In this document: in pieces, positions 505-4,940 of the stretch
How positions within the stretch are numbered: the first letter of the stretch is position 1
Layout of the letters: the number at the start of each line of letters is the position of its first letter
Sequence record: NC_031107.2
DNA: 64,000 nucleotides
Strand: one strand, 5' to 3'
Position numbers and translations under genes: made by a program
Notes under the pieces: model-generated
The model's database searches: none
Seen by the model: only the letters and a program-made list of their open reading frames with translations
What the model was told of the DNA's origin: nothing

Positions 505-612
505 ACCTCAGGAAGAACCAAAACAGCTAGGGCTGCGGGATACGGTGTTGACGCTGTTTGGCCAACGCAAGAAATCGCCACCTATCCGCATGGCACCTGA
601 GTGAAGAATTCT

Positions 613-688
613 GGGGGAGTAGTTCAACTGGTAGAGCGTCGGTCTCCAAAACCGAATGTTGCAGGTTCGAGTCCTGTCTCCCCTGCCA
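613..688 (+). tRNA. trnW: tRNA-Trp (CCA)
   Basis: 76-nt cloverleaf: acceptor GGGGGAG/CTCCCCT, anticodon arm TCGGT-CTCCAAA-ACCGA, T loop TTCGAGT, encoded CCA. Confidence 0.95.
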
Positions 689-751
689 AATTTAGCCAGC
701 AAGAATGTGAGAAACCACGAGAGGACAATTGACCATTCGCTGGAGATTCTC

Positions 752-976
752 ATGAACTTGTATTTGCTAGAACGTGAAGACGATGTCGGTTACGACGAGT
801 TTGATTCCATAGTCGTTGCTGCTCCTACGGAGCAAGCTGCGCGCGCAACGAAGCCCAACCATGGGCGCTGGACTGATGTGTTTCGCAACGAAGACGGAGT
901 AATCCTGAGATGCAAACACATTGGCACAACGCACTTACCGGAAGGGGTCGTCCACGAATCGTTCAACGCAGGCTGA
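752..976 (+). CDS. small phage hypothetical protein (74 aa)
   Basis: ATG at 752 after GGAGA. The upstream part of the track ORF (656) overlaps tRNA-Trp and is rejected. Confidence 0.65.
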   Translation: MNLYLLEREDDVGYDEFDSIVVAAPTEQAARATKPNHGRWTDVFRNEDGVILRCKHIGTTHLPEGVVHESFNAG

Positions 977-1006
977 ATACCGGTGGGCTTCGGCCCACCA
1001 CACCTT

Positions 1007-1082
1007 GGGGCAATGGCTCGAGTGGTTAGGCGACGAATTGCAAATTCGGATCAGGTCGGTTCAAGTCCGGCTTGCCCCTCCA
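1007..1082 (+). tRNA. trnC: tRNA-Cys (GCA)
   Basis: Acceptor GGGGCAA/TTGCCCC, anticodon loop TTGCAAA, T loop TTCAAGT, encoded CCA. Confidence 0.9.
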
Positions 1083-1215
1083 ACACACTTGGCTCGGTGT
1101 GTTACTTTTGAAATAGAAAACCCGTAGAGCCTTTCGGGGGTGTTGCCAGATGGAGTGCTTGTTACTCTACGGTCTTTCACTCCTGAGCCCTGGCTCACCC
1201 ACCTAAAGGAAAATA

Positions 1216-1644
1216 GTGATGTTTGGATTCTTAAAGAAACGTTCTTCTCGTGCGATGTCTGAAATCAAAAAGTTCGACAAACGCGACCTGGCCGAAGCTG
1301 TGGTAAATGCTGCGTATCTGATTGCGTATGCTGACGGCGAGCTGGAGTCTTCCGAGAAAGCGAAAATCGAACAAGTGCTGCGCGCGAACCCGGTTCTCTC
1401 TAACTTCCAGAGTGAACTTAATGCTATCGCGTCCACGATCATTGCACAGCTGGAAGCCGACATCGACATCGGTCGTCGTGCTGCCCTTCGTCAGATTGCT
1501 GACGTGAAAGGCGACCAGCGTGAGTCCGAAGACGTGCTGGACGTGGCTGTTGCTATCGCCCGCGCGGATGGCGAAATCGAACCTGCCGAAGAAGCGATGC
1601 TGAAACAGATCGCCGAAGCGATGGGTCTGCGTTACGACGCCTAA
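1216..1644 (+). CDS. terB: TerB-family (tellurite-resistance/co-chaperone-like) protein
   Basis: Duplicated TerB-type motifs AYLIAYADGELESSEK and VAVAIARADGEIEPAEEAMLKQIAEAMGL; AAAGGA RBS. Confidence 0.8.
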   Translation: MMFGFLKKRSSRAMSEIKKFDKRDLAEAVVNAAYLIAYADGELESSEKAKIEQVLRANPVLSNFQSELNAIASTIIAQLEADIDIGRRAALRQIADVKGDQRESEDVLDVAVAIARADGEIEPAEEAMLKQIAEAMGLRYDA

Positions 1645-1647
1645 GCC

Positions 1648-1830
1648 ATGAAGCTGAAAACCAAGTTATACATCGCGGCCGCGTTGCTGCTGATGCTGCT
1701 TGGCAACTTCATAGGCCGTGCGTTTACGCTCATTGCCTACGTCGCTGTAATCAGCTTAGTAGCCTACCTGGCATGGCCAGTGATCAAAACCTTTGCCGCT
1801 AAGTCAAAAGCGAAGGCGAAGAAGGTCTGA
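1648..1830 (+). CDS. small two-TM membrane protein
   Basis: 60 aa with two hydrophobic segments and basic termini, located 3 nt after the terB stop. Confidence 0.65.
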   Translation: MKLKTKLYIAAALLLMLLGNFIGRAFTLIAYVAVISLVAYLAWPVIKTFAAKSKAKAKKV

Positions 1831-1892
1831 TTGATGGTGCGGGGTCGTTCCCCCGCACCTCCTCTAATTCTCATCTAAAAATAGGTATAATC

Positions 1893-2729
1893 ATGAGAAA
1901 GCTTCTAATCGGTTTAGTAGCAGCCATTAGCTTTAGCGCGTTTGCAGGACAGGACGTGACCATTACCACCGGTCAACAGGGTTTAACGTACAACGCCACG
2001 TACGGCGTTAATCTTGCCAGTGCTCTGAACGAGTTCGGCAACAAGTCCACAGTGGTACCGTCAAAAGGTTCCCTGGACAACCTGGATAAAGTGGCTGCCG
2101 GTACGGCGCAGCTCGGCTTTACACAGGCAGACGCATTCCAGTTCTGGCGCGCACAGCACCCGAACGAAGCTCAGAACGTAGACATCGTTGGCCAGTTGGG
2201 TGACGAGTGTGTCTTCGTGGCTGTGAAGAAAGACGGTAAGGTCGGTGATGAAGCTGACCTCAAAGACGGCATTAAGATTGCTGTCGGTGAACCGGACTCT
2301 GGCTCATACGCCAGTTGGCAATACCTGCAAGGTTTGGTGAAGCAGTATTCGAAAACCGAAACCTATGCGAAAGGCGGCATCCGTTCTCTGTCCAAAGTGG
2401 CCACGGGTGAATACGACGCGTTCATGTGGGTAAGTGCGCCGGGCAAACCTAATAAGTTTCTGGAAGCGGTTAACCAGGAGAGTTCAGGTCTGAAACTCAT
2501 CGACATGAACAACTGGAACGTCAACGACAAACTGCCTAACGGGCAAGCGGTCTACGAGAAGAAGTCCGCGAAAGTTGACAACAGCGCGTGGTTCGGTGGT
2601 GACGTTAAAGTCCCTTGCACCAAAACACTGGTAGTCGCTAATACCGATGCCGGTGACGATCTGCTGGAAGCCGTTTCATCCATCCTCCTGAAAAATGCAC
2701 CACGCATCATGGGGACGGCCAAACAATAG
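1893..2729 (+). CDS. secreted periplasmic-binding-protein fold, TAXI-TRAP receptor-like
   Basis: Signal peptide MRKLLIGLVAAISFSAFA; motifs ITTGQQGLTY, SKGSLDNL..V..G.AQLGFTQAD and IAVGEPDSGS resemble TAXI solute receptors. Confidence 0.7.
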   Translation: MRKLLIGLVAAISFSAFAGQDVTITTGQQGLTYNATYGVNLASALNEFGNKSTVVPSKGSLDNLDKVAAGTAQLGFTQADAFQFWRAQHPNEAQNVDIVGQLGDECVFVAVKKDGKVGDEADLKDGIKIAVGEPDSGSYASWQYLQGLVKQYSKTETYAKGGIRSLSKVATGEYDAFMWVSAPGKPNKFLEAVNQESSGLKLIDMNNWNVNDKLPNGQAVYEKKSAKVDNSAWFGGDVKVPCTKTLVVANTDAGDDLLEAVSSILLKNAPRIMGTAKQ

Positions 2730-3230
2730 CTGTGTGTTAATTGCACTGACGGGGCTGATATCCCTGTTGGAACGGTTTCATCTTTTGGGGTTGGATGAAG
2801 TGAAGAAACGTGGCACGCCAATAAGTCCACGTTAACCGGATTGCACAAAGAACTATCTGCGGGTAGGCAATCCTGCCGTTATGAACTTATCAGGTGACTA
2901 AACATGGAAGAGTTGTTCAGAGCGTTTCTGTACCGTATGGGTACCTGGTTGAAAGACCTCAAGCTCTGGAAGCTCGATACTTATTGGTTATCAGGATGTG
3001 GGACTGAACGCCATAAACCTGTTTTAGGACGAGAGTCCTCAACCCAGGCGACGTCTATTGTAGACGAAGGTCAAGCACCGGCCCATTAAGCCGACTCGCT
3101 GACATAGGCAACCTTCACCCCACAATCTGAATGTAACTGATGGGATTGAGTTCCCAGTGTGAATGAGCAGCAGTGTGCTGCAGTTGGCGCGGTACCTCAT
3201 ACGGCCGGTACGTCACGAAAAGAAAGTAAG
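2730..3230 (+). ncRNA. candidate large structured ncRNA (class unknown)
   Basis: About 500 nt with no convincing CDS and more than 10 consecutive hairpins, including GAAA and GAGA tetraloops; leads directly into the tRNA array. Confidence 0.4.
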
Positions 3231-3233
3231 TAG

Positions 3234-3301
3234 GGTTGGTGCTTGGAGGCGCTAAGACCGGAGTCCTGCTCTGGCTCAGAAGAAGAAGTCCATCAACCCC
3301 A
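3234..3301 (+). ncRNA. candidate tRNA-like RNA lacking a T arm, CCA-ended
   Basis: GTTGGTG/CATCAAC stem + C + CCA, with two internal hairpins. Confidence 0.4.
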
Positions 3302-3307
3302 CTTAAT

Positions 3308-3383
3308 GCGAGTATAGCTCAGCTGGTAGAGCATCTGGTTCCCAACCAGAGGGTCGTGAGTTCGAATCTCATTACTCGCTCCA
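3308..3383 (+). tRNA. trnG: tRNA-Gly (CCC)
   Basis: Acceptor GCGAGTA/TACTCGC, anticodon arm TCTGG-TTCCCAA-CCAGA, encoded CCA. Confidence 0.95.
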
Positions 3384-3491
3384 ATAAATCAATGACTTAT
3401 AGTGATTTCCCCATTTCGCTACAAGACTGCACCAATATATGTAAAACACCCAAGACGTGTGCGAATTCGAAGTTGAGTTCTCAGACGTATT

Positions 3492-3577
3492 GGCGCGGTA
3501 CTCAAGCGGTCAACGAGAGCAGACTGTAAATCTGTTGCCTTCGGGCTTCGTAGGTTCAAATCCTTCCCTCGCCACCA
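3492..3577 (+). tRNA. trnY: tRNA-Tyr (GTA)
   Basis: Class II tRNA with long variable arm, loop CTGTAAA, T loop TTCAAAT, CCA; one acceptor mismatch. Confidence 0.93.
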
Positions 3578-3583
3578 ATATTT

Positions 3584-3659
3584 GTTCCTGTCGTCTAGTG
3601 GTCCAGGACACCTGGTTTTCAACCAGGCAACCGGAGTTCAATTCTCCGCAGGAACGCCA
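3584..3659 (+). tRNA. trnE: tRNA-Glu (TTC)
   Basis: Acceptor GTTCCTG/CAGGAAC, anticodon arm CCTGG-TTTTCAA-CCAGG, CCA. Confidence 0.93.
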
Positions 3660-3664
3660 AACAA

Positions 3665-3810
3665 TGACACTGACTCACGCCGCCTTTGAGCAGCAGAAGA
3701 AGTCTGGCAGCCAATAAAAGCATCCACCGTCTACTGGGCCTGAGGGTCTCGGATAGAGGGTCGCTAAGCGCAGCCGTATAACTCCGTGGGATTCGGAGAA
3801 GTGTCACCCA
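3665..3810 (+). ncRNA. candidate 146-nt RNA with tRNA-like acceptor and T-like arm
   Basis: TGACACT/AGTGTCA + C + CCA; hairpin CTCCG-TGGGATT-CGGAG at the T-arm position; interior fold unclear. Confidence 0.4.
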
Positions 3811-3814
3811 TTAT

Positions 3815-3891
3815 AGAGCCGTAGTCGAGTTGGTTAAGACGCCTCCCTGTCACGGAGGAGATCGTGGGTTCGAGCCCCATCGGTTCTGCCA
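3815..3891 (+). tRNA. trnD: tRNA-Asp (GTC)
   Basis: Acceptor AGAGCCG/CGGTTCT, anticodon arm CCTCC-CTGTCAC-GGAGG, CCA. Confidence 0.95.
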
Positions 3892-3897
3892 AACATC

Positions 3898-4018
3898 AGT
3901 CACTTAATCTCAATCGGATAGAGACAGAACATTACTTCAACAACACTAGGGTGTCCATGGCACGTTGGCGTTGTGTAATGCGATGAGGTTACAGGTTCGA
4001 GTCCTGTAGTGGCTACCA
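3898..4018 (+). ncRNA. tRNA-shaped RNA with ~45-nt extended anticodon arm (121 nt)
   Basis: Acceptor AGTCACT/AGTGGCT + A + CCA, D arm TCTC/GAGA and canonical T arm ACAGG-TTCGAGT-CCTGT; no 7-nt anticodon loop. Confidence 0.65.
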
Positions 4019-4026
4019 TTTTAAAT

Positions 4027-4103
4027 TGTCTCGTAGCTCAGTTGGTTAGAGCGCTCGCCTGATAAGCGGGAGGTCGGTAGTTCAAGTCTACTCGAGACAA
4101 CCA
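4027..4103 (+). tRNA. trnI: tRNA-Ile (GAT)
   Basis: Acceptor TGTCTCG/CGAGACA, loop CTGATAA, CCA. Confidence 0.95.
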
Positions 4104-4110
4104 GCATTAT

Positions 4111-4191
4111 GGGAACATTGTCACCATCAGTGATGACAGGAGTGATGGATTCGTCCCCACTCGACTGGGTGGAAGCCTGGGTGTTCCCCCA
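4111..4191 (+). ncRNA. non-canonical cloverleaf with G-1:C73 and CCA
   Basis: G + GGAACAT/GTGTTCC + C + CCA; three internal arms, the middle one capped by a TTCG tetraloop instead of an anticodon loop. Confidence 0.5.
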
Positions 4192-4197
4192 TTTAGT

Positions 4198-4275
4198 GGT
4201 GTATGTAGTTCAGCTGGTTAGAATACTGGCTTGTGACGTCAGTGGTCGAGAGTTCGAGTCTCTCCATACACCCCA
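4198..4275 (+). tRNA. trnH: tRNA-His (GTG)
   Basis: G-1, acceptor GTGTATG/CATACAC, C73, loop TTGTGAC, CCA. Confidence 0.95.
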
Positions 4276-4280
4276 GTTCC

Positions 4281-4370
4281 GGAGAATTGTCCGAGTGGCT
4301 GAAAGAGCTCCCCTGCTAAGGGAGTGGTGGCGCAAGCTGCCCGAAGGTTCGAATCCTTCATTCTCCGCCA
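4281..4370 (+). tRNA. trnS: tRNA-Ser (GCT)
   Basis: 90-nt class II tRNA, loop CTGCTAA, long variable arm, G73, CCA. Confidence 0.95.
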
Positions 4371-4377
4371 AATCTAT

Positions 4378-4498
4378 AGTCGCCTAGCTCAAGATTAGAG
4401 CACACCTTACGACCAATACTGACCAACACGCACCGCGGTGCAATAATGGCGGTGGCGTAGTGGTGCGGTTACCGGTTCAAGTCCGGTGGTGACTTCCC
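4378..4498 (+). ncRNA. second tRNA-shaped RNA with extended anticodon arm (121 nt)
   Basis: Acceptor AGTCGCC/GGTGACT, D arm GCTC-AAGATTA-GAGC, T arm ACCGG-TTCAAGT-CCGGT; ends T-CCC; ~45-nt paired insertion in the anticodon arm. Confidence 0.65.
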
Positions 4499-4504
4499 TA
4501 CAAT

Positions 4505-4583
4505 GAACCCGTTAGCTTGAGGAAAAAGCACCCGACCCATAATCGGATTTTTCACTGGTTCGAATCCAGTACGGTGTTCGCGA
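4505..4583 (+). tRNA. degenerate tRNA with CAT anticodon (Met/Ile2-like, possible pseudo-tRNA)
   Basis: T arm ACTGG-TTCGAAT-CCAGT and anticodon arm CCGA-CCCATAA-TCGG, but C33, a bulged acceptor and a 3-prime end GCGA instead of NCCA. Confidence 0.5.
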
Positions 4584-4588
4584 TTTAT

Positions 4589-4664
4589 GACTCTGTAGTT
4601 CAGTTGGTAGAACGGATGACTGTTAATTATCTCGTCGCAGGTTCGAGTCCTGCCGGAGTCGCCA
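4589..4664 (+). tRNA. trnN: tRNA-Asn (GTT)
   Basis: Acceptor GACTCTG/CGGAGTC, anticodon arm GATGA-CTGTTAA-TTATC, CCA. Confidence 0.95.
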
Positions 4665-4669
4665 CTTTT

Positions 4670-4940
4670 GTGTTACCCTTGTCCCGGAGACATTCCTAAG
4701 ACAAATCCATCCATGGTCGGGGGTAGCACGAAAAACCATTCGCTGTTCCGTATCCTTTACGTTAGTCTCCAGACGCGTTTCGGGGTACGGGATGGTGAAC
4801 CACTTTCTGGTTGCATCATCATTTCCGTGAACCCTGCCTGGTGCGTTGGTGCGGATGTAACCGGAATCAATTAGCCCATGCCGATGCGCTAAATGTCTTC
4901 CGAACGCGACCCGCGTTCTGCCCAGGAAGACGCTCCTGTT
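4670..4940 (+). ncRNA. run of long GU-rich stem-loops, candidate small RNAs
   Basis: 11-, 17- and 13-bp closing stems at 4670-4729, 4739-4799 and 4805-4866, followed by CCA, CCA and TCA; two further hairpins to 4940. Confidence 0.45.

What the first reader, a model, noticed from the sequence alone, without database searches (positions are those of the whole stretch)
3898..4018. tRNA body with the anticodon loop replaced by a ~45-nt irregular helix
Seen: canonical acceptor, D arm, variable region AGGTT, T arm and ACCA. The anticodon arm continues as CATTAC(3930-3935)/GTAATG(3975-3980) and CAAC/GTTG, capped by ACAC-TAGG-GTGT. I found no simple excision that gives a paired 5-bp stem with a 7-nt loop, so it is not obviously a classical intron. 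Known: bacteria lack the archaeal/eukaryotic tRNA splicing endonuclease, and 45 nt is far too short for a self-splicing intron. Inference: a tRNA mimic, or a substrate of an unknown phage-encoded splicing or processing route.
Basis: partly seen in the sequence, partly recalled or inferred. Interest (0 to 1): 0.78.

Follow-up and report, generated by a model that had tools for sequence, protein, structure and literature searches.

The report
Anticodon-less long-armed tRNA-like phage RNA
A jumbo Erwinia phage encodes, inside its tRNA gene array, a 121-nt RNA with a normal tRNA body whose anticodon arm is replaced by a long, evolutionarily maintained rod, so it looks like a non-decoding tRNA mimic of unknown role, not a tRNA with a removable intron.

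Summary
The window is Erwinia phage vB_EamM_Asesino, bases 1-64000. At 3898-4018 (+) lies an unannotated 121-nt tRNA-shaped gene that ARAGORN and Rfam both miss. It has a 7-bp acceptor stem, D arm, AGGUU variable loop, canonical T arm and ACCA. A 61-nt irregular hairpin sits where the 17-nt anticodon arm belongs.

The only ortholog found (phage pEa_SNUABM_9, 76% identity) differs at 29 positions yet keeps all 36 proposed pairs. Six of those pairs changed on both sides (simulation P about 5e-6). G.U pairs point to the + strand RNA.

No single excision gives a 5-bp stem with a 7-nt loop in either ortholog. The same test restores perfect anticodon arms in 40 of 87 other long phage tRNA-likes (0.9 expected by chance). 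tBLASTn with T4 RnlA, T4 PseT, and E. coli RtcB and RtcA finds nothing in the 246-kb genome.

A 121-nt paralog lies at 4378-4498, mis-annotated as tRNA-Ile(aat).

Verdict: a structurally constrained, non-decoding tRNA mimic, probably matured like a tRNA. Its function is unknown; a protein-binding decoy or scaffold is my best guess. The splicing reading is not supported. It is a new variant of a known kind, the tRNA-like ncRNAs found in phage tRNA arrays.

The parts
3898..3904 (+). Acceptor stem, 5' strand (RNA nt 1-7, AGUCACU)
   Evidence: Pairs with 4008-4014. A5-U68 becomes G-C in pEa_SNUABM_9.
3905..3907 (+). Connector U8-A9-A (3 nt instead of the usual 2)
   Evidence: Read from the sequence; invariant in the ortholog.
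3908..3924 (+). D arm: stem UCUC/GAGA, 9-nt loop AAUCGGAUA carrying A14, A15, G18, G19, A21
   Evidence: Constrained fold of both orthologs. The stem is invariant, so it is untested by covariation.
3925..3929 (+). Base of the long arm, 5' side (CAGAA): C-G, A-U, then tandem G.A / A.G and A.C
   Evidence: Opposite 3981-3985 (CGAUG). Sequence invariant except C84 to U, which turns A.C into A-U in the ortholog.
3930..3935 (+). Helix H2, 5' strand (CAUUAC)
   Evidence: Pairs with 3975-3980. Two double compensatory changes and one single change in the ortholog.
3936..3939 (+). 4-nt bulge UUCA (UUUA in the ortholog)
   Evidence: Unpaired in the constrained MFE of both orthologs.
3940..3946 (+). Helix H3, 5' strand (ACAACAC)
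   Evidence: Pairs with 3968-3974. One double and one single change; A.C becomes G.U.
3947..3950 (+). Internal loop, 5' side (UAGG); opposite 3964-3967 (GUUG)
   Evidence: The sequence is not conserved between orthologs.
3951..3963 (+). Apical hairpin H4: GUGUC-CAU-GGCAC, containing the invariant palindrome CCAUGG
   Evidence: One double and one single compensatory change. The tip GUCCAUGGC is invariant.
3964..3967 (+). Internal loop, 3' side (GUUG)
3968..3974 (+). Helix H3, 3' strand (GCGUUGU)
3975..3980 (+). Helix H2, 3' strand (GUAAUG)
3981..3985 (+). Base of the long arm, 3' side (CGAUG)
3986..3990 (+). Variable loop AGGUU; U48 can form a Levitt pair with A15
   Evidence: Invariant in the ortholog. 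The pairing is inferred from standard tRNA numbering.
3991..4007 (+). T arm ACAGG-UUCGAGU-CCUGU
   Evidence: Canonical T loop. C-G becomes U-A in the ortholog.
4008..4014 (+). Acceptor stem, 3' strand (AGUGGCU)
4015..4018 (+). Discriminator A (G in the ortholog) plus encoded CCA
4378..4498 (+). Paralog P2: 121-nt long-armed tRNA-like RNA, annotated tRNA-Ile(aat) in GenBank
   Evidence: Closest body relative of the finding in the array: 70% identity over the 5' part and 76% over the 3' part. About 22-bp rod in the constrained fold. A 97.6% copy exists in Stratton and phiEaH2. ARAGORN's intron call is unstable between the copies.

Best explanation
The element is a gene for a non-decoding tRNA-like RNA.

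Inferred biogenesis: it is transcribed with the surrounding tRNA genes as one precursor. RNase P cuts it out at the 5' end and the host's tRNA 3'-end enzymes trim the 3' end, leaving its encoded CCA.

Inferred fold: an L shape whose acceptor/T limb and elbow look like those of an ordinary tRNA. The other limb is extended by an irregular rod of about 25 layers (2 Watson-Crick pairs, a conserved tandem G.A motif, then 6-, 7- and 5-bp helices separated by a 4-nt bulge and a 4x4 loop). This rod takes the place of the 5-bp anticodon stem and 7-nt loop.

Consequence: with no anticodon loop, and a limb roughly twice the normal length, it cannot decode on the ribosome.

Shown: selection has kept the rod paired while its sequence drifted, and has kept the tRNA body nearly unchanged.

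Most likely mode of action (inferred): mimicry. The RNA presents a tRNA body to some tRNA-recognising protein, such as a host tRNA-targeting nuclease or modifier, or a phage factor. It would act as a decoy or scaffold, with the rod as a self-contained module that must stay folded. It is not an intron-containing pre-tRNA.
For: - Architecture and position in the tRNA array.
- The ortholog in pEa_SNUABM_9 is the same length with no indels. It differs at 29 positions, 17 of them in paired columns. All 36 pairs are kept, 6 by changes on both sides and 3 on one side.
- A neutral-substitution simulation expects 27 of 36 pairs to survive; P(36 of 36) is about 5e-6 and P(6 or more compensated pairs) is 3e-5 to 3e-4.
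- Sliding the 3' partners by 1-3 columns drops pairing from 98.6% to 24-53%.
- By my count, about 39% of arm positions (nt 33-83) differ against about 13% of body positions.
- G.U pairs (U35.G81, U45.G75, U47.G73, G48.U72, G54.U66) would be A.C mismatches on the other strand, so the folded molecule is the + strand RNA.
- An exhaustive excision search finds no 17-nt anticodon arm (at least 4 of 5 bp, U33, R37) in either ortholog under any D-stem or variable-loop register.
- The same search restores perfect arms in 40 of 87 other long phage tRNA-likes, against 0.9 expected.
- No + strand terminator-like site lies inside the array.
- A second 121-nt copy with a rod of similar length (about 22 bp) lies in the same array.
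- Anticodon-less long-armed tRNA bodies recur in related jumbo phages: SPAsTU has a 111-nt example, and SPN3US carries the same body with only a stub.
- The discriminator base differs among copies (A, G, U), which argues against a conserved aminoacylation identity.
Against: - There are no expression, processing or binding data; everything about maturation and mode of action is inferred.
- Only two orthologs exist, so each covarying pair rests on a single event. The tool's shuffle control is weak with two rows (42 of 500 shuffles reach the observed score).
- The invariant D stem and base pairs are untested.
- Selection for a paired rod could merely reflect the need not to disturb the body's fold; it does not show that the rod does anything.
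- The gene is absent from the closest relatives (Stratton, phiEaH2) and from ChrisDB, so it is dispensable for the phage type.
- The D arm needs a 3-nt connector. The paralog's D loop lacks G18 and G19, so the elbow may be imperfect.
- No candidate protein partner was identified.
Confidence: 0.55

Rival explanations
1. It is a pre-tRNA with an intron. An unknown phage or host activity cuts out part of the rod and religates the ends to give a working tRNA. One example: excising 34 nt would leave stem CAUUA/UAAUG with loop CUUCAAC, anticodon UCA; in the ortholog the loop would be CUUUAAC, anticodon UUA.
For: - Short 'enigmatic' introns are reported in megaphage tRNAs (Devoto et al., bioRxiv 10.1101/356790; PMC6784885).
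- They are common in IMG/VR phage contigs.
- With its intron option, ARAGORN reads the paralog as tRNA-Arg(acg) with a 48-nt intron at position 37/38.
- The bulge region of the finding can be read as a 7-nt loop with a stop-codon-reading anticodon in both orthologs (sequence).
Against: - No single excision gives a standard anticodon arm in either ortholog.
- The suppressor-like reading leaves five extra layers (C-G, A-U, G.A, A.G, A.C) between the D arm and the stem. That is a 10-layer anticodon stem, which by standard tRNA geometry would misplace the anticodon.
- The two orthologs would read different stop codons.
- No bulge-helix-bulge motif is present.
- The genome has no relative of RnlA, PseT, RtcB or RtcA. 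RNA repair systems are reported as less common in nucleus-forming jumbo phages, a class to which I assign Asesino on its split RNA polymerase subunits and kinship to SPN3US rather than on a test (PMC7824862).
- ARAGORN's intron call for the paralog changes with a few substitutions in Stratton. It also needs a missing nucleotide 26 and an A.C mismatch.
Confidence: 0.1
2. It is a decaying tRNA gene that picked up an insertion: a relic with no function of its own, tolerated because it sits in a fast-turnover tRNA array.
For: - Distribution is patchy: present in Asesino and pEa_SNUABM_9, absent in Stratton, phiEaH2 and ChrisDB.
- The arrays of this phage group hold many odd tRNA-like pieces.
- SPAsTU has only a fragment resembling the 3' half at the syntenic Asp-Ile spacer (my reading).
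Against: - At 24% divergence with no indels, all 36 pairs are kept and 6 are compensated. This is very unlikely without selection.
- The tRNA body, CCA and T loop are intact in both phages.
Confidence: 0.1
3. The tRNA body is only a carrier, a natural tRNA scaffold giving processing and stability. The rod is the active part: a hairpin effector that binds a protein, dimerises through its palindromic CCAUGG tip, is cut by RNase III, or pairs with a target RNA.
For: - The tip GUCCAUGGC and the GA-rich base are invariant, while the helices between them covary.
- Engineered tRNA scaffolds, in which the anticodon arm is swapped for a cargo RNA, are stable and correctly processed in E. coli (my knowledge: Ponchon and Dardel 2007).
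- A 14-nt stretch (nt 38-51) is complementary to the gp163 mRNA.
Against: - The 14-nt match is near chance (about 0.09 expected) and the segment is not conserved in the ortholog.
- The rods of the paralog and of the SPAsTU element share no sequence with this one.
- In the SPN3US group the same kind of body exists with only a stub, so the arm can be dispensable.
Confidence: 0.15
4. It is a Y-RNA-like (YrlA-type) RNA, circularly permuted, that works with a Ro60/Rsr protein in RNA quality control.
For: - YrlA RNAs have a tRNA-like D/T/acceptor module whose remaining stem extends into a long helix. M. smegmatis YrlA is cut by RNase P and receives CCA (PMC4201824).
- There is a weak Rfam YrlA hit at 3987-4052 (26.4 bits).
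Against: - The Rfam hit is far below the gathering score (69 bits). It spans the T arm of this element and the D arm of the next tRNA, which is just the permuted order of any two adjacent tRNAs.
- The GNCGAA(N)G motif is absent from both strands of the arm (sequence).
- No TROVE/Ro60 gene is annotated in Asesino. Such genes are reported only in a small subset of group 2 and 3 jumbo phages (PMC7824862).
Confidence: 0.04
5. The conserved feature is a DNA palindrome acting at the DNA level (a recombination or replication signal, or a protein-binding cruciform), not an RNA.
For: The arm is an imperfect inverted repeat, and its tip is a CCATGG palindrome.
Against: - Several maintained pairs are G.U on the + strand, which would be A.C on the other strand.
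- The repeat is embedded exactly where the anticodon arm of a complete, strand-specific tRNA body belongs, in a co-oriented tRNA array.
Confidence: 0.03

Closest known systems
Phage T4 stable RNAs rnaC and rnaD (species 1 and 2 RNAs)
   Same: They are small stable RNAs (139 and 119 nt) encoded as a pair inside a phage tRNA gene cluster, on the same strand as the tRNAs, with function still unknown (my knowledge). rnaC carries a T-arm-like hairpin.
   Different: There is no detectable sequence similarity: blastn with the element finds no T4 hit. As annotated, the T4 RNAs do not fold with a 7-bp acceptor stem, a D arm and a single rod at the anticodon position.
Engineered tRNA scaffolds (anticodon arm replaced by a cargo RNA; Ponchon and Dardel 2007, from my knowledge)
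   Same: The design is identical: an intact acceptor, D and T body, with an arbitrary structured RNA grafted onto the anticodon stem. These constructs are processed and accumulate like tRNAs in E. coli.
   Different: Those are synthetic. Here the design is natural and evolutionarily maintained, and the cargo has no known activity.
'Enigmatic' introns of megaphage tRNAs (Devoto et al. 2019) and the long tRNA genes of IMG/VR phage contigs
   Same: They are phage tRNA-array genes of 100-130 nt with 30-55 extra nucleotides at the anticodon arm.
   Different: In 40 of 87 of those, removing one segment restores a perfect anticodon stem-loop. In this element nothing does.
Bacterial Y RNA YrlA (Rfam RF02553)
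   Same: It is a tRNA mimic with T, D and acceptor modules and a long helix where the anticodon stem would be. Some are RNase P and CCA-adding enzyme substrates (PMC4201824).
   Different: The topology is permuted: YrlA's ends lie in the long helix and its acceptor stem is closed by a loop. This element also lacks the GNCGAA motif and any linked Ro60 gene, and it fails the Rfam threshold.
tmRNA tRNA-like domain with helix 2
   Same: It is a tRNA-like acceptor/T module joined to a long irregular helix, with no anticodon.
   Different: ARAGORN finds no tmRNA. The element has U3.G70 instead of the G3.U70 alanine identity pair, no reading frame or pseudoknots, and a full D arm. At 121 nt it is well short of the roughly 300 nt or more typical of tmRNA (my knowledge).

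Membership tests
Canonical decoding tRNA (Rfam RF00005) | 7-bp acceptor stem, T arm with a T-Psi-C type loop, encoded or addable CCA | tested here: met
Canonical decoding tRNA (Rfam RF00005) | 5-bp anticodon stem with a 7-nt loop (U33, purine 37) | tested here: not met
   A 61-nt rod sits in that position. No such arm exists even after any single excision.
Canonical decoding tRNA (Rfam RF00005) | Scores at or above the family's gathering threshold, or is called by a tRNA finder | tested here: not met
   No RF00005 hit at gathering, nor at E<=10 in a 1.6-kb search. ARAGORN fails with and without its intron option.
Intron-containing tRNA of the archaeal/eukaryal (endonuclease plus ligase) type | Excising one segment restores a standard anticodon stem-loop | tested here: not met
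   Zero solutions in both orthologs. The positive control gives 40 of 87.
Intron-containing tRNA of the archaeal/eukaryal (endonuclease plus ligase) type | Bulge-helix-bulge motif at the splice sites | tested here: not met
   By inspection of the conserved fold there is one 4-nt bulge on the 5' strand only, with no opposed 3-nt bulges 4 bp apart.
Intron-containing tRNA of the archaeal/eukaryal (endonuclease plus ligase) type | A splicing endonuclease and an RNA ligase or healing enzymes are available | tested here: inconclusive
   The phage genome has no tBLASTn match to T4 RnlA, T4 PseT, E. coli RtcB or RtcA (best E 0.39). EndA-like enzymes, T4 Rnl2 (RnlB) and the host's own enzymes were not tested, and tBLASTn misses distant relatives.
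Group I intron in a bacterial or phage tRNA gene | A ribozyme core of roughly 200 nt or more (P1-P9), matching Rfam Intron_gpI | tested here: not met
   The insert is about 44 nt net, and no Rfam hit appears at E<=10.
tmRNA | G3.U70 pair, tag reading frame, detection by ARAGORN | tested here: not met
   The pair is U3.G70, and ARAGORN finds no tmRNA.
YrlA / bacterial Y RNA (RF02553) | Rfam gathering score; GNCGAA(N)G motif; linked Ro60/TROVE gene | tested here: not met
   26.4 bits against a 69-bit threshold, and the hit spans two genes. The motif is absent (sequence). No such gene is annotated, though no profile search for TROVE was run.
T4 rnaC/rnaD-type stable RNAs | Sequence or structural homology to the T4 RNAs | tested here: not met
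   blastn gives no T4 hit, and the folds differ. Only the genomic setting is shared.
tRNA mimic / tRNA-like ncRNA (functional class, not a homology family) | tRNA-type acceptor/T/D body under selection, without decoding capacity | tested here: met
tRNA mimic / tRNA-like ncRNA (functional class, not a homology family) | Recognised by tRNA enzymes (RNase P, CCA-adding enzyme, modifiers, synthetases) | not testable with these tools
   Needs biochemistry or RNA-seq.

The most novel reading that the evidence does not exclude
The element is one visible member of a large, undescribed population of phage 'tRNA-bodied' RNAs. In these, the anticodon arm is either an exchangeable cargo module (a natural tRNA scaffold delivering, for example, anti-defence RNA decoys) or a substrate for an unknown short-intron processing pathway in bacteria. 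On this reading, Asesino's two 121-nt RNAs would be active effectors whose rod length (about 22-25 layers in both paralogs) is itself the selected feature.
Probability: 0.15. Interest if true: 0.85.

Novelty: new variant of a known kind. Interest (0 to 1): 0.58.

Why it matters
Phage tRNA arrays are increasingly viewed as counter-defence loci that replace or shield tRNAs attacked by host nucleases. A conserved RNA with a full tRNA body but no anticodon cannot be explained by codon supply. It points to a second use of the tRNA fold by phages: mimicry, decoy or carrier.

The element and its relatives are invisible to standard tRNA finders and to Rfam, or get mis-annotated. The paralog, for example, is deposited as tRNA-Ile(aat). 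Phage tRNA counts and codon-usage arguments can therefore be wrong.

The side observation may matter more. About half have cleanly excisable short inserts at two defined sites, one with a conserved ACAGCAA motif. This revives the open question of how, or whether, bacteria and phages remove short tRNA introns.

Tried and rejected
1. More orthologs.
- blastn (distant mode) against 50,697 phage records found only Asesino and pEa_SNUABM_9.
- Three pattern scans of IMG/VR and one of JGI metagenomes gave only chance matches.
- One IMG/VR hit, L074, has a near-identical D arm and T arm and a 24-bp rod. It lies next to an integrase at what looks like a prophage border, so I did not count it as family.

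2. Intron readings.
- ARAGORN with its intron option finds nothing for this element. For the paralog it gives unstable calls: Arg-acg i(36,48) in Asesino against Arg-gcg i(32,40) in Stratton.
- The exhaustive excision search was negative.

3. A suppressor tRNA hidden at the bulge (CU-UCA-AC and CU-UUA-AC). Rejected because five extra stem layers remain and the two orthologs would read different stop codons.

4. Aminoacylation identity. There is no G3.U70 (it is U3.G70). A73 with A15-U48 resembles tRNA-Leu requirements, but the discriminator is G in the ortholog and U in the paralog, so I dropped this.

5. Y RNA, tmRNA and group I intron memberships all failed (see the membership tests).

6. 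An antisense target in the phage genome. The longest match is 14 nt, with about 0.09 expected by chance, and it is not conserved.

7. A conformational switch cannot be excluded with two sequences.

8. A detailed alignment of the paralog's rod to this rod is ambiguous, because several alternative pairings exist for GGUG. I therefore used only rod length and topology.

9. Literature. Nine full-text searches found no description of this RNA, or of ACAGCAA-type tRNA inserts, apart from Devoto et al..

10. No covariance model was built. With two orthologs and no searchable collection beyond the fetched loci, it would have added nothing.
Full report
**Identity of the window**

The window is the first 64 kb of Erwinia phage vB_EamM_Asesino (NC_031107.2, 246,290 bp, genus Erskinevirus), matched at 100% identity. 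Asesino is a jumbo phage with split multisubunit RNA polymerase genes, related to the SPN3US group.

Bases 600-4700 hold a co-oriented tRNA array. The finding lies between tRNA-Asp (3815-3891) and tRNA-Ile (4027-4103). The GenBank record annotates nothing there.

**Checking the observation**

- a 7-bp acceptor stem (3898-3904 with 4008-4014);
- a D arm;
- the variable loop AGGUU;
- a canonical T arm (ACAGG-UUCGAGU-CCUGU);
- the tail A-CCA;
- the continuation CAUUAC/GUAAUG.

The element is invisible to standard tools. ARAGORN does not call it, with or without its intron option. Rfam's tRNA model gives no hit, even at E<=10 in a 1.6-kb search.

I wrote a strict descriptor: perfect 7-bp acceptor, U8, 4-bp D stem, perfect T arm with a TTCRA-type loop, total length 92-145 nt. 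It matches exactly two places in the 64-kb window on either strand, this element and a second 121-nt element at 4378-4498. Shuffled windows give 0.02 matches.

I would change two details:
- The D stem reads better as UCUC/GAGA. This gives canonical A14, G18, G19 and A21, at the price of a 3-nt connector.

**Comparative evidence**

A blastn search of 50,697 phage records finds one ortholog. It lies in Erwinia phage pEa_SNUABM_9 (genus Machinavirus) at 76% identity, unannotated, between tRNA-Phe and further odd tRNA-like sequences.

The two copies align over 121 nt without a gap and differ at 29 positions. On the structure below, all 36 pairs are standard in the ortholog:
- 6 pairs changed on both sides: one in the acceptor stem, one in the T stem, two in H2, one in H3 and one in H4;
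- 3 pairs changed on one side;
- an A.C mismatch in Asesino becomes G.U.

Sliding the 3' partners by 1-3 columns drops pairing from 98.6% to 24-53%, and compensated pairs from 6 to at most 1.

I simulated 29 random substitutions with the observed transition bias. On average 27 of 36 pairs survive. All 36 survive with P about 5e-6, and six or more compensated pairs arise with P between 3e-5 and 3e-4.

With only two rows the tool's own shuffle control is weak (42 of 500), and each covariation is a single event. Even so, the pattern is hard to explain without selection on RNA structure. Several maintained pairs are G.U on the + strand, so the folded molecule is the + strand transcript rather than DNA.

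By my count from the alignment, the rod (nt 33-83) differs at about 39% of positions and the tRNA body at about 13%. The structure of the rod is kept, not its sequence.

Four parts stay invariant:
- the base of the arm (CAGAA opposite YGAUG, i.e. C-G, A-U, tandem G.A/A.G, then A.C or A-U);
- three of the four bulge positions (UUCA in Asesino, UUUA in the ortholog);
- the tip GUCCAUGGC, which contains the palindrome CCAUGG;
- the variable loop.

**Anatomy**

RNA numbering; window coordinate = 3897 + n.

| RNA nt | Feature |
|---|---|
| 1-7 / 111-117 | acceptor stem |
| 8-10 | connector |
| 11-14 / 24-27 | D stem, enclosing a 9-nt loop |
| 28-88 | long arm (detailed below) |
| 89-93 | variable loop |
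| 94-98 / 106-110 | T stem, enclosing the T loop UUCGAGU |
| 118 | discriminator |
| 119-121 | CCA |

The long arm breaks down as:
- 28-29 / 87-88: two Watson-Crick pairs;
- 30-32 / 84-86: the GA motif;
- H2, 33-38 / 78-83;
- bulge, 39-42;
- H3, 43-49 / 71-77;
- a 4x4 internal loop;
- H4, 54-58 / 62-66;
- loop CAU.

This limb has about 25 stacked layers where a tRNA has five pairs and a loop. A15 and U48 can form a Levitt pair, and C13-G22-G46 and U12-A23-A9 can form the usual triples. That is inference from standard tRNA numbering, but it suggests an L-shaped fold is plausible.

**Is it an interrupted tRNA?**

I searched exhaustively for any single contiguous excision between the D stem and the variable loop that leaves a 17-nt arm. 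I required at least 4 of 5 stem pairs, U33 and a purine at position 37. I allowed 0-2 nucleotides at position 26, variable loops of 4-6 nt, and both D-stem registers. Neither ortholog has a solution.

As a positive control I collected phage tRNA-like genes from IMG/VR with a generic pattern: a standard D arm, then 52-80 nt, then a T loop. Of the hits, 87 distinct sequences have closing acceptor and T stems. Forty of the 87 give a perfect 5-bp stem plus canonical loop after one excision, against 0.9 expected from shuffled inserts. The test works, real short-insert phage tRNAs are common, and this element is not one of them.

One tempting reading is stem CAUUA/UAAUG with loop CU-UCA-AC (CU-UUA-AC in the ortholog) after removing 34 nt. 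I rejected it for two reasons. Five extra layers would remain between the D arm and the stem, and the two phages would read different stop codons.

There is also no bulge-helix-bulge geometry.

I then ran tBLASTn across the complete Asesino genome with T4 RnlA, T4 PseT, T4 DNA ligase, and E. coli RtcB and RtcA. The best E-value is 0.39. The annotated 'ribonuclease' gp226 is an RNase H, gp225 is an Rv2179c-like 3'-5' exoribonuclease, and gp217 is a weak macro domain.

Iyer et al. (PMC7824862) report that RNA repair systems are less common in nucleus-forming group 1 jumbo phages. I assign Asesino to that group by inference from its split RNA polymerase subunits and its kinship to SPN3US, not from a test.

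EndA-like enzymes, T4 Rnl2 and host enzymes were not tested, and tBLASTn is not sensitive to remote homologs. Splicing is therefore unsupported rather than excluded.

**The paralog and relatives**

The element at 4378-4498 is also 121 nt. Over the tRNA body it is this element's closest relative in the array, at 70% identity over the 5' part and 76% over the 3' part. The two share A1-U72, A15/U48, a GGUU variable loop and the T stem pattern. In a constrained fold it carries a rod of about 22 bp.

GenBank calls it tRNA-Ile(aat). ARAGORN's intron mode calls it Arg(acg) with a 48-nt intron. In the 97.6% identical copy in Stratton and phiEaH2 the call changes to Arg(gcg) with a different intron. 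The Arg reading also needs a missing nucleotide 26 and an A.C mismatch. Its discriminator is U and it lacks an encoded CCA.

Stratton and phiEaH2 lack the finding itself; there, tRNA-Asp is followed directly by tRNA-Ile. ChrisDB lacks it too. The gene is therefore accessory and patchily distributed across two genera.

In the SPN3US group another tRNA-like body shows that arm length can vary. SPAsTU carries a 111-nt version with CCUCC + 38 nt + GGAGG. SPN3US and many relatives have the same body with only a CCU-CUUG-AGG stub. Neither version has an anticodon loop.

Anticodon-less tRNA bodies with arms of variable length are thus a recurrent feature of this phage lineage.

**How it most likely works**

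Shown:
- a complete tRNA body and a paired rod are under purifying selection;
- decoding is structurally impossible;
- the gene is embedded in the tRNA operon with tRNA-like spacing;
- no + strand terminator-like site lies within the array.

Inferred:
- the RNA is released by RNase P and 3' trimming, and is stabilised by the tRNA fold and CCA, as engineered tRNA scaffolds are (my knowledge);
- it acts by mimicry, offering its acceptor/T/elbow surface to a tRNA-recognising protein while being unable to enter translation.

Because the discriminator differs between copies (A, G, U), a conserved aminoacylation identity is unlikely.

I could not determine whether the rod is an active module or only a self-contained fold that must not disturb the body. 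The invariant tip and GA motif hint at the former. The stub variant in SPN3US hints at the latter.

I put 0.55 on 'functional non-decoding tRNA mimic matured by the tRNA pathway'. The decoy or scaffold mechanism is the least certain part.

**Comparison with known systems**

- Closest in setting are T4's rnaC and rnaD. These are two stable RNAs inside the T4 tRNA cluster whose function is still unknown (my knowledge). I found no sequence or fold homology.
- Closest in design are synthetic tRNA scaffolds.
- YrlA Y RNAs are tRNA mimics with a long helix at the anticodon position, but with permuted ends, a Ro60 partner and a motif that is absent here (PMC4201824).
- The tmRNA and group I intron memberships fail.
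- Devoto et al. reported 'enigmatic introns' in Lak megaphage tRNAs and suspected they are common in large phages. My IMG/VR survey agrees, but this element belongs to the fraction that is not explainable as an intron.

**Verdict**

It is a new variant of a known kind: tRNA-like non-coding RNAs in phage tRNA arrays. It is absent from Rfam and from the annotation. Interest is moderate (0.58), because function is unknown, only two orthologs exist and the gene is dispensable among close relatives. The broader class it points to deserves a dedicated study.

Noticed in passing
window 4378-4498 (+): A second 121-nt long-armed tRNA-like gene, paralogous to the finding, is deposited as tRNA-Ile(aat). 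ARAGORN's intron mode reads it as Arg(acg) with a 48-nt intron, but the call changes in the 97.6% identical Stratton copy. It has a rod of about 22 bp and no G18/G19 in the D loop.
   Followed up: partly
window about 4113-4191 (+); also L314:4162-4243: An unannotated ~80-nt cloverleaf-shaped RNA lies between tRNA-Ile and tRNA-His. It has an 8-bp terminal stem, three hairpins, no canonical D or T loops and a CCCCA tail. It is conserved in Salmonella phage SPAsTU with three double compensatory changes. In Stratton a tRNA-Met occupies this slot.
   Followed up: partly
window about 3666-3811 (+); also L002:1760-1915 and L314:3664-3797: An unannotated ~145-nt element lies between tRNA-Glu and tRNA-Asp. 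It has a terminal helix GACAC/GUGUC, a T-arm-like hairpin CUCCG-UGGGAUU-CGGAG and an ACCCA tail. The ends are conserved and the centre varies across Asesino, Stratton and SPAsTU.
   Followed up: partly
Forty become perfect tRNAs after one excision (0.9 expected). Twenty of these, covering at least 12 anticodons, share a 39-52-nt insert after nucleotide 28 or 29 of the anticodon stem. The insert has an A/U-rich linker, a 6-7-bp hairpin, an ACAGCAA-like motif (15 of 20 match my pattern, with near variants in others) and an A/U-rich tail. Rfam sees only 'tRNA', and I found no paper describing it.
   Followed up: partly
L314:4293-4403 (SPAsTU) versus L318:1505-1581 (SPN3US): The same tRNA-like body (GGCUUUG...CAAAGCA, tail AGAG, no CCA) carries a 48-nt rod in SPAsTU but only a CCU-CUUG-AGG stub in SPN3US and many relatives. 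SPN3US annotates it as tRNA-OTHER. Neither version has an anticodon loop.
   Followed up: partly
L004:2633-2782 (pEa_SNUABM_9): Directly after the ortholog of the finding lies a 150-nt stretch closed by a perfect 7-bp acceptor-like stem (UGGGAUA/UGUCCCA) and containing two T-loop motifs. ARAGORN's intron mode calls it tRNA-Met with a 58-nt intron.
   Followed up: no
L124, L241, L250, L184, L242 (IMG/VR): In several long phage tRNA-likes the inserted hairpin ends in a T-arm-like stem-loop (GGUUCGAnUCC). This echoes Devoto et al.'s remark that a Lak phage tRNA intron looks like a tRNA itself.
   Followed up: no
L314:3873-4000 (SPAsTU): The syntenic Asp-Ile spacer in SPAsTU (128 nt) holds no full copy of the finding. 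It does contain a stretch resembling its 3' half (GAUGAGG, then a weak T-arm-like hairpin). This could be a remnant. It rests on my reading only.
   Followed up: no
window 3955-3960: The tip of the rod contains the palindrome CCATGG, invariant in both orthologs although the flanking stem covaries. It could allow loop-loop dimerisation. The chance of a 6-nt palindrome at a given site is about 1 in 64.
   Followed up: no
window 4506-4579 (+): The gene called tRNA-Met(cat) scores only 33.7 bits on RF00005, and ARAGORN draws mismatches in its acceptor and anticodon stems. Its counterparts in related phages abut another tRNA-like element with no spacer.
   Followed up: no
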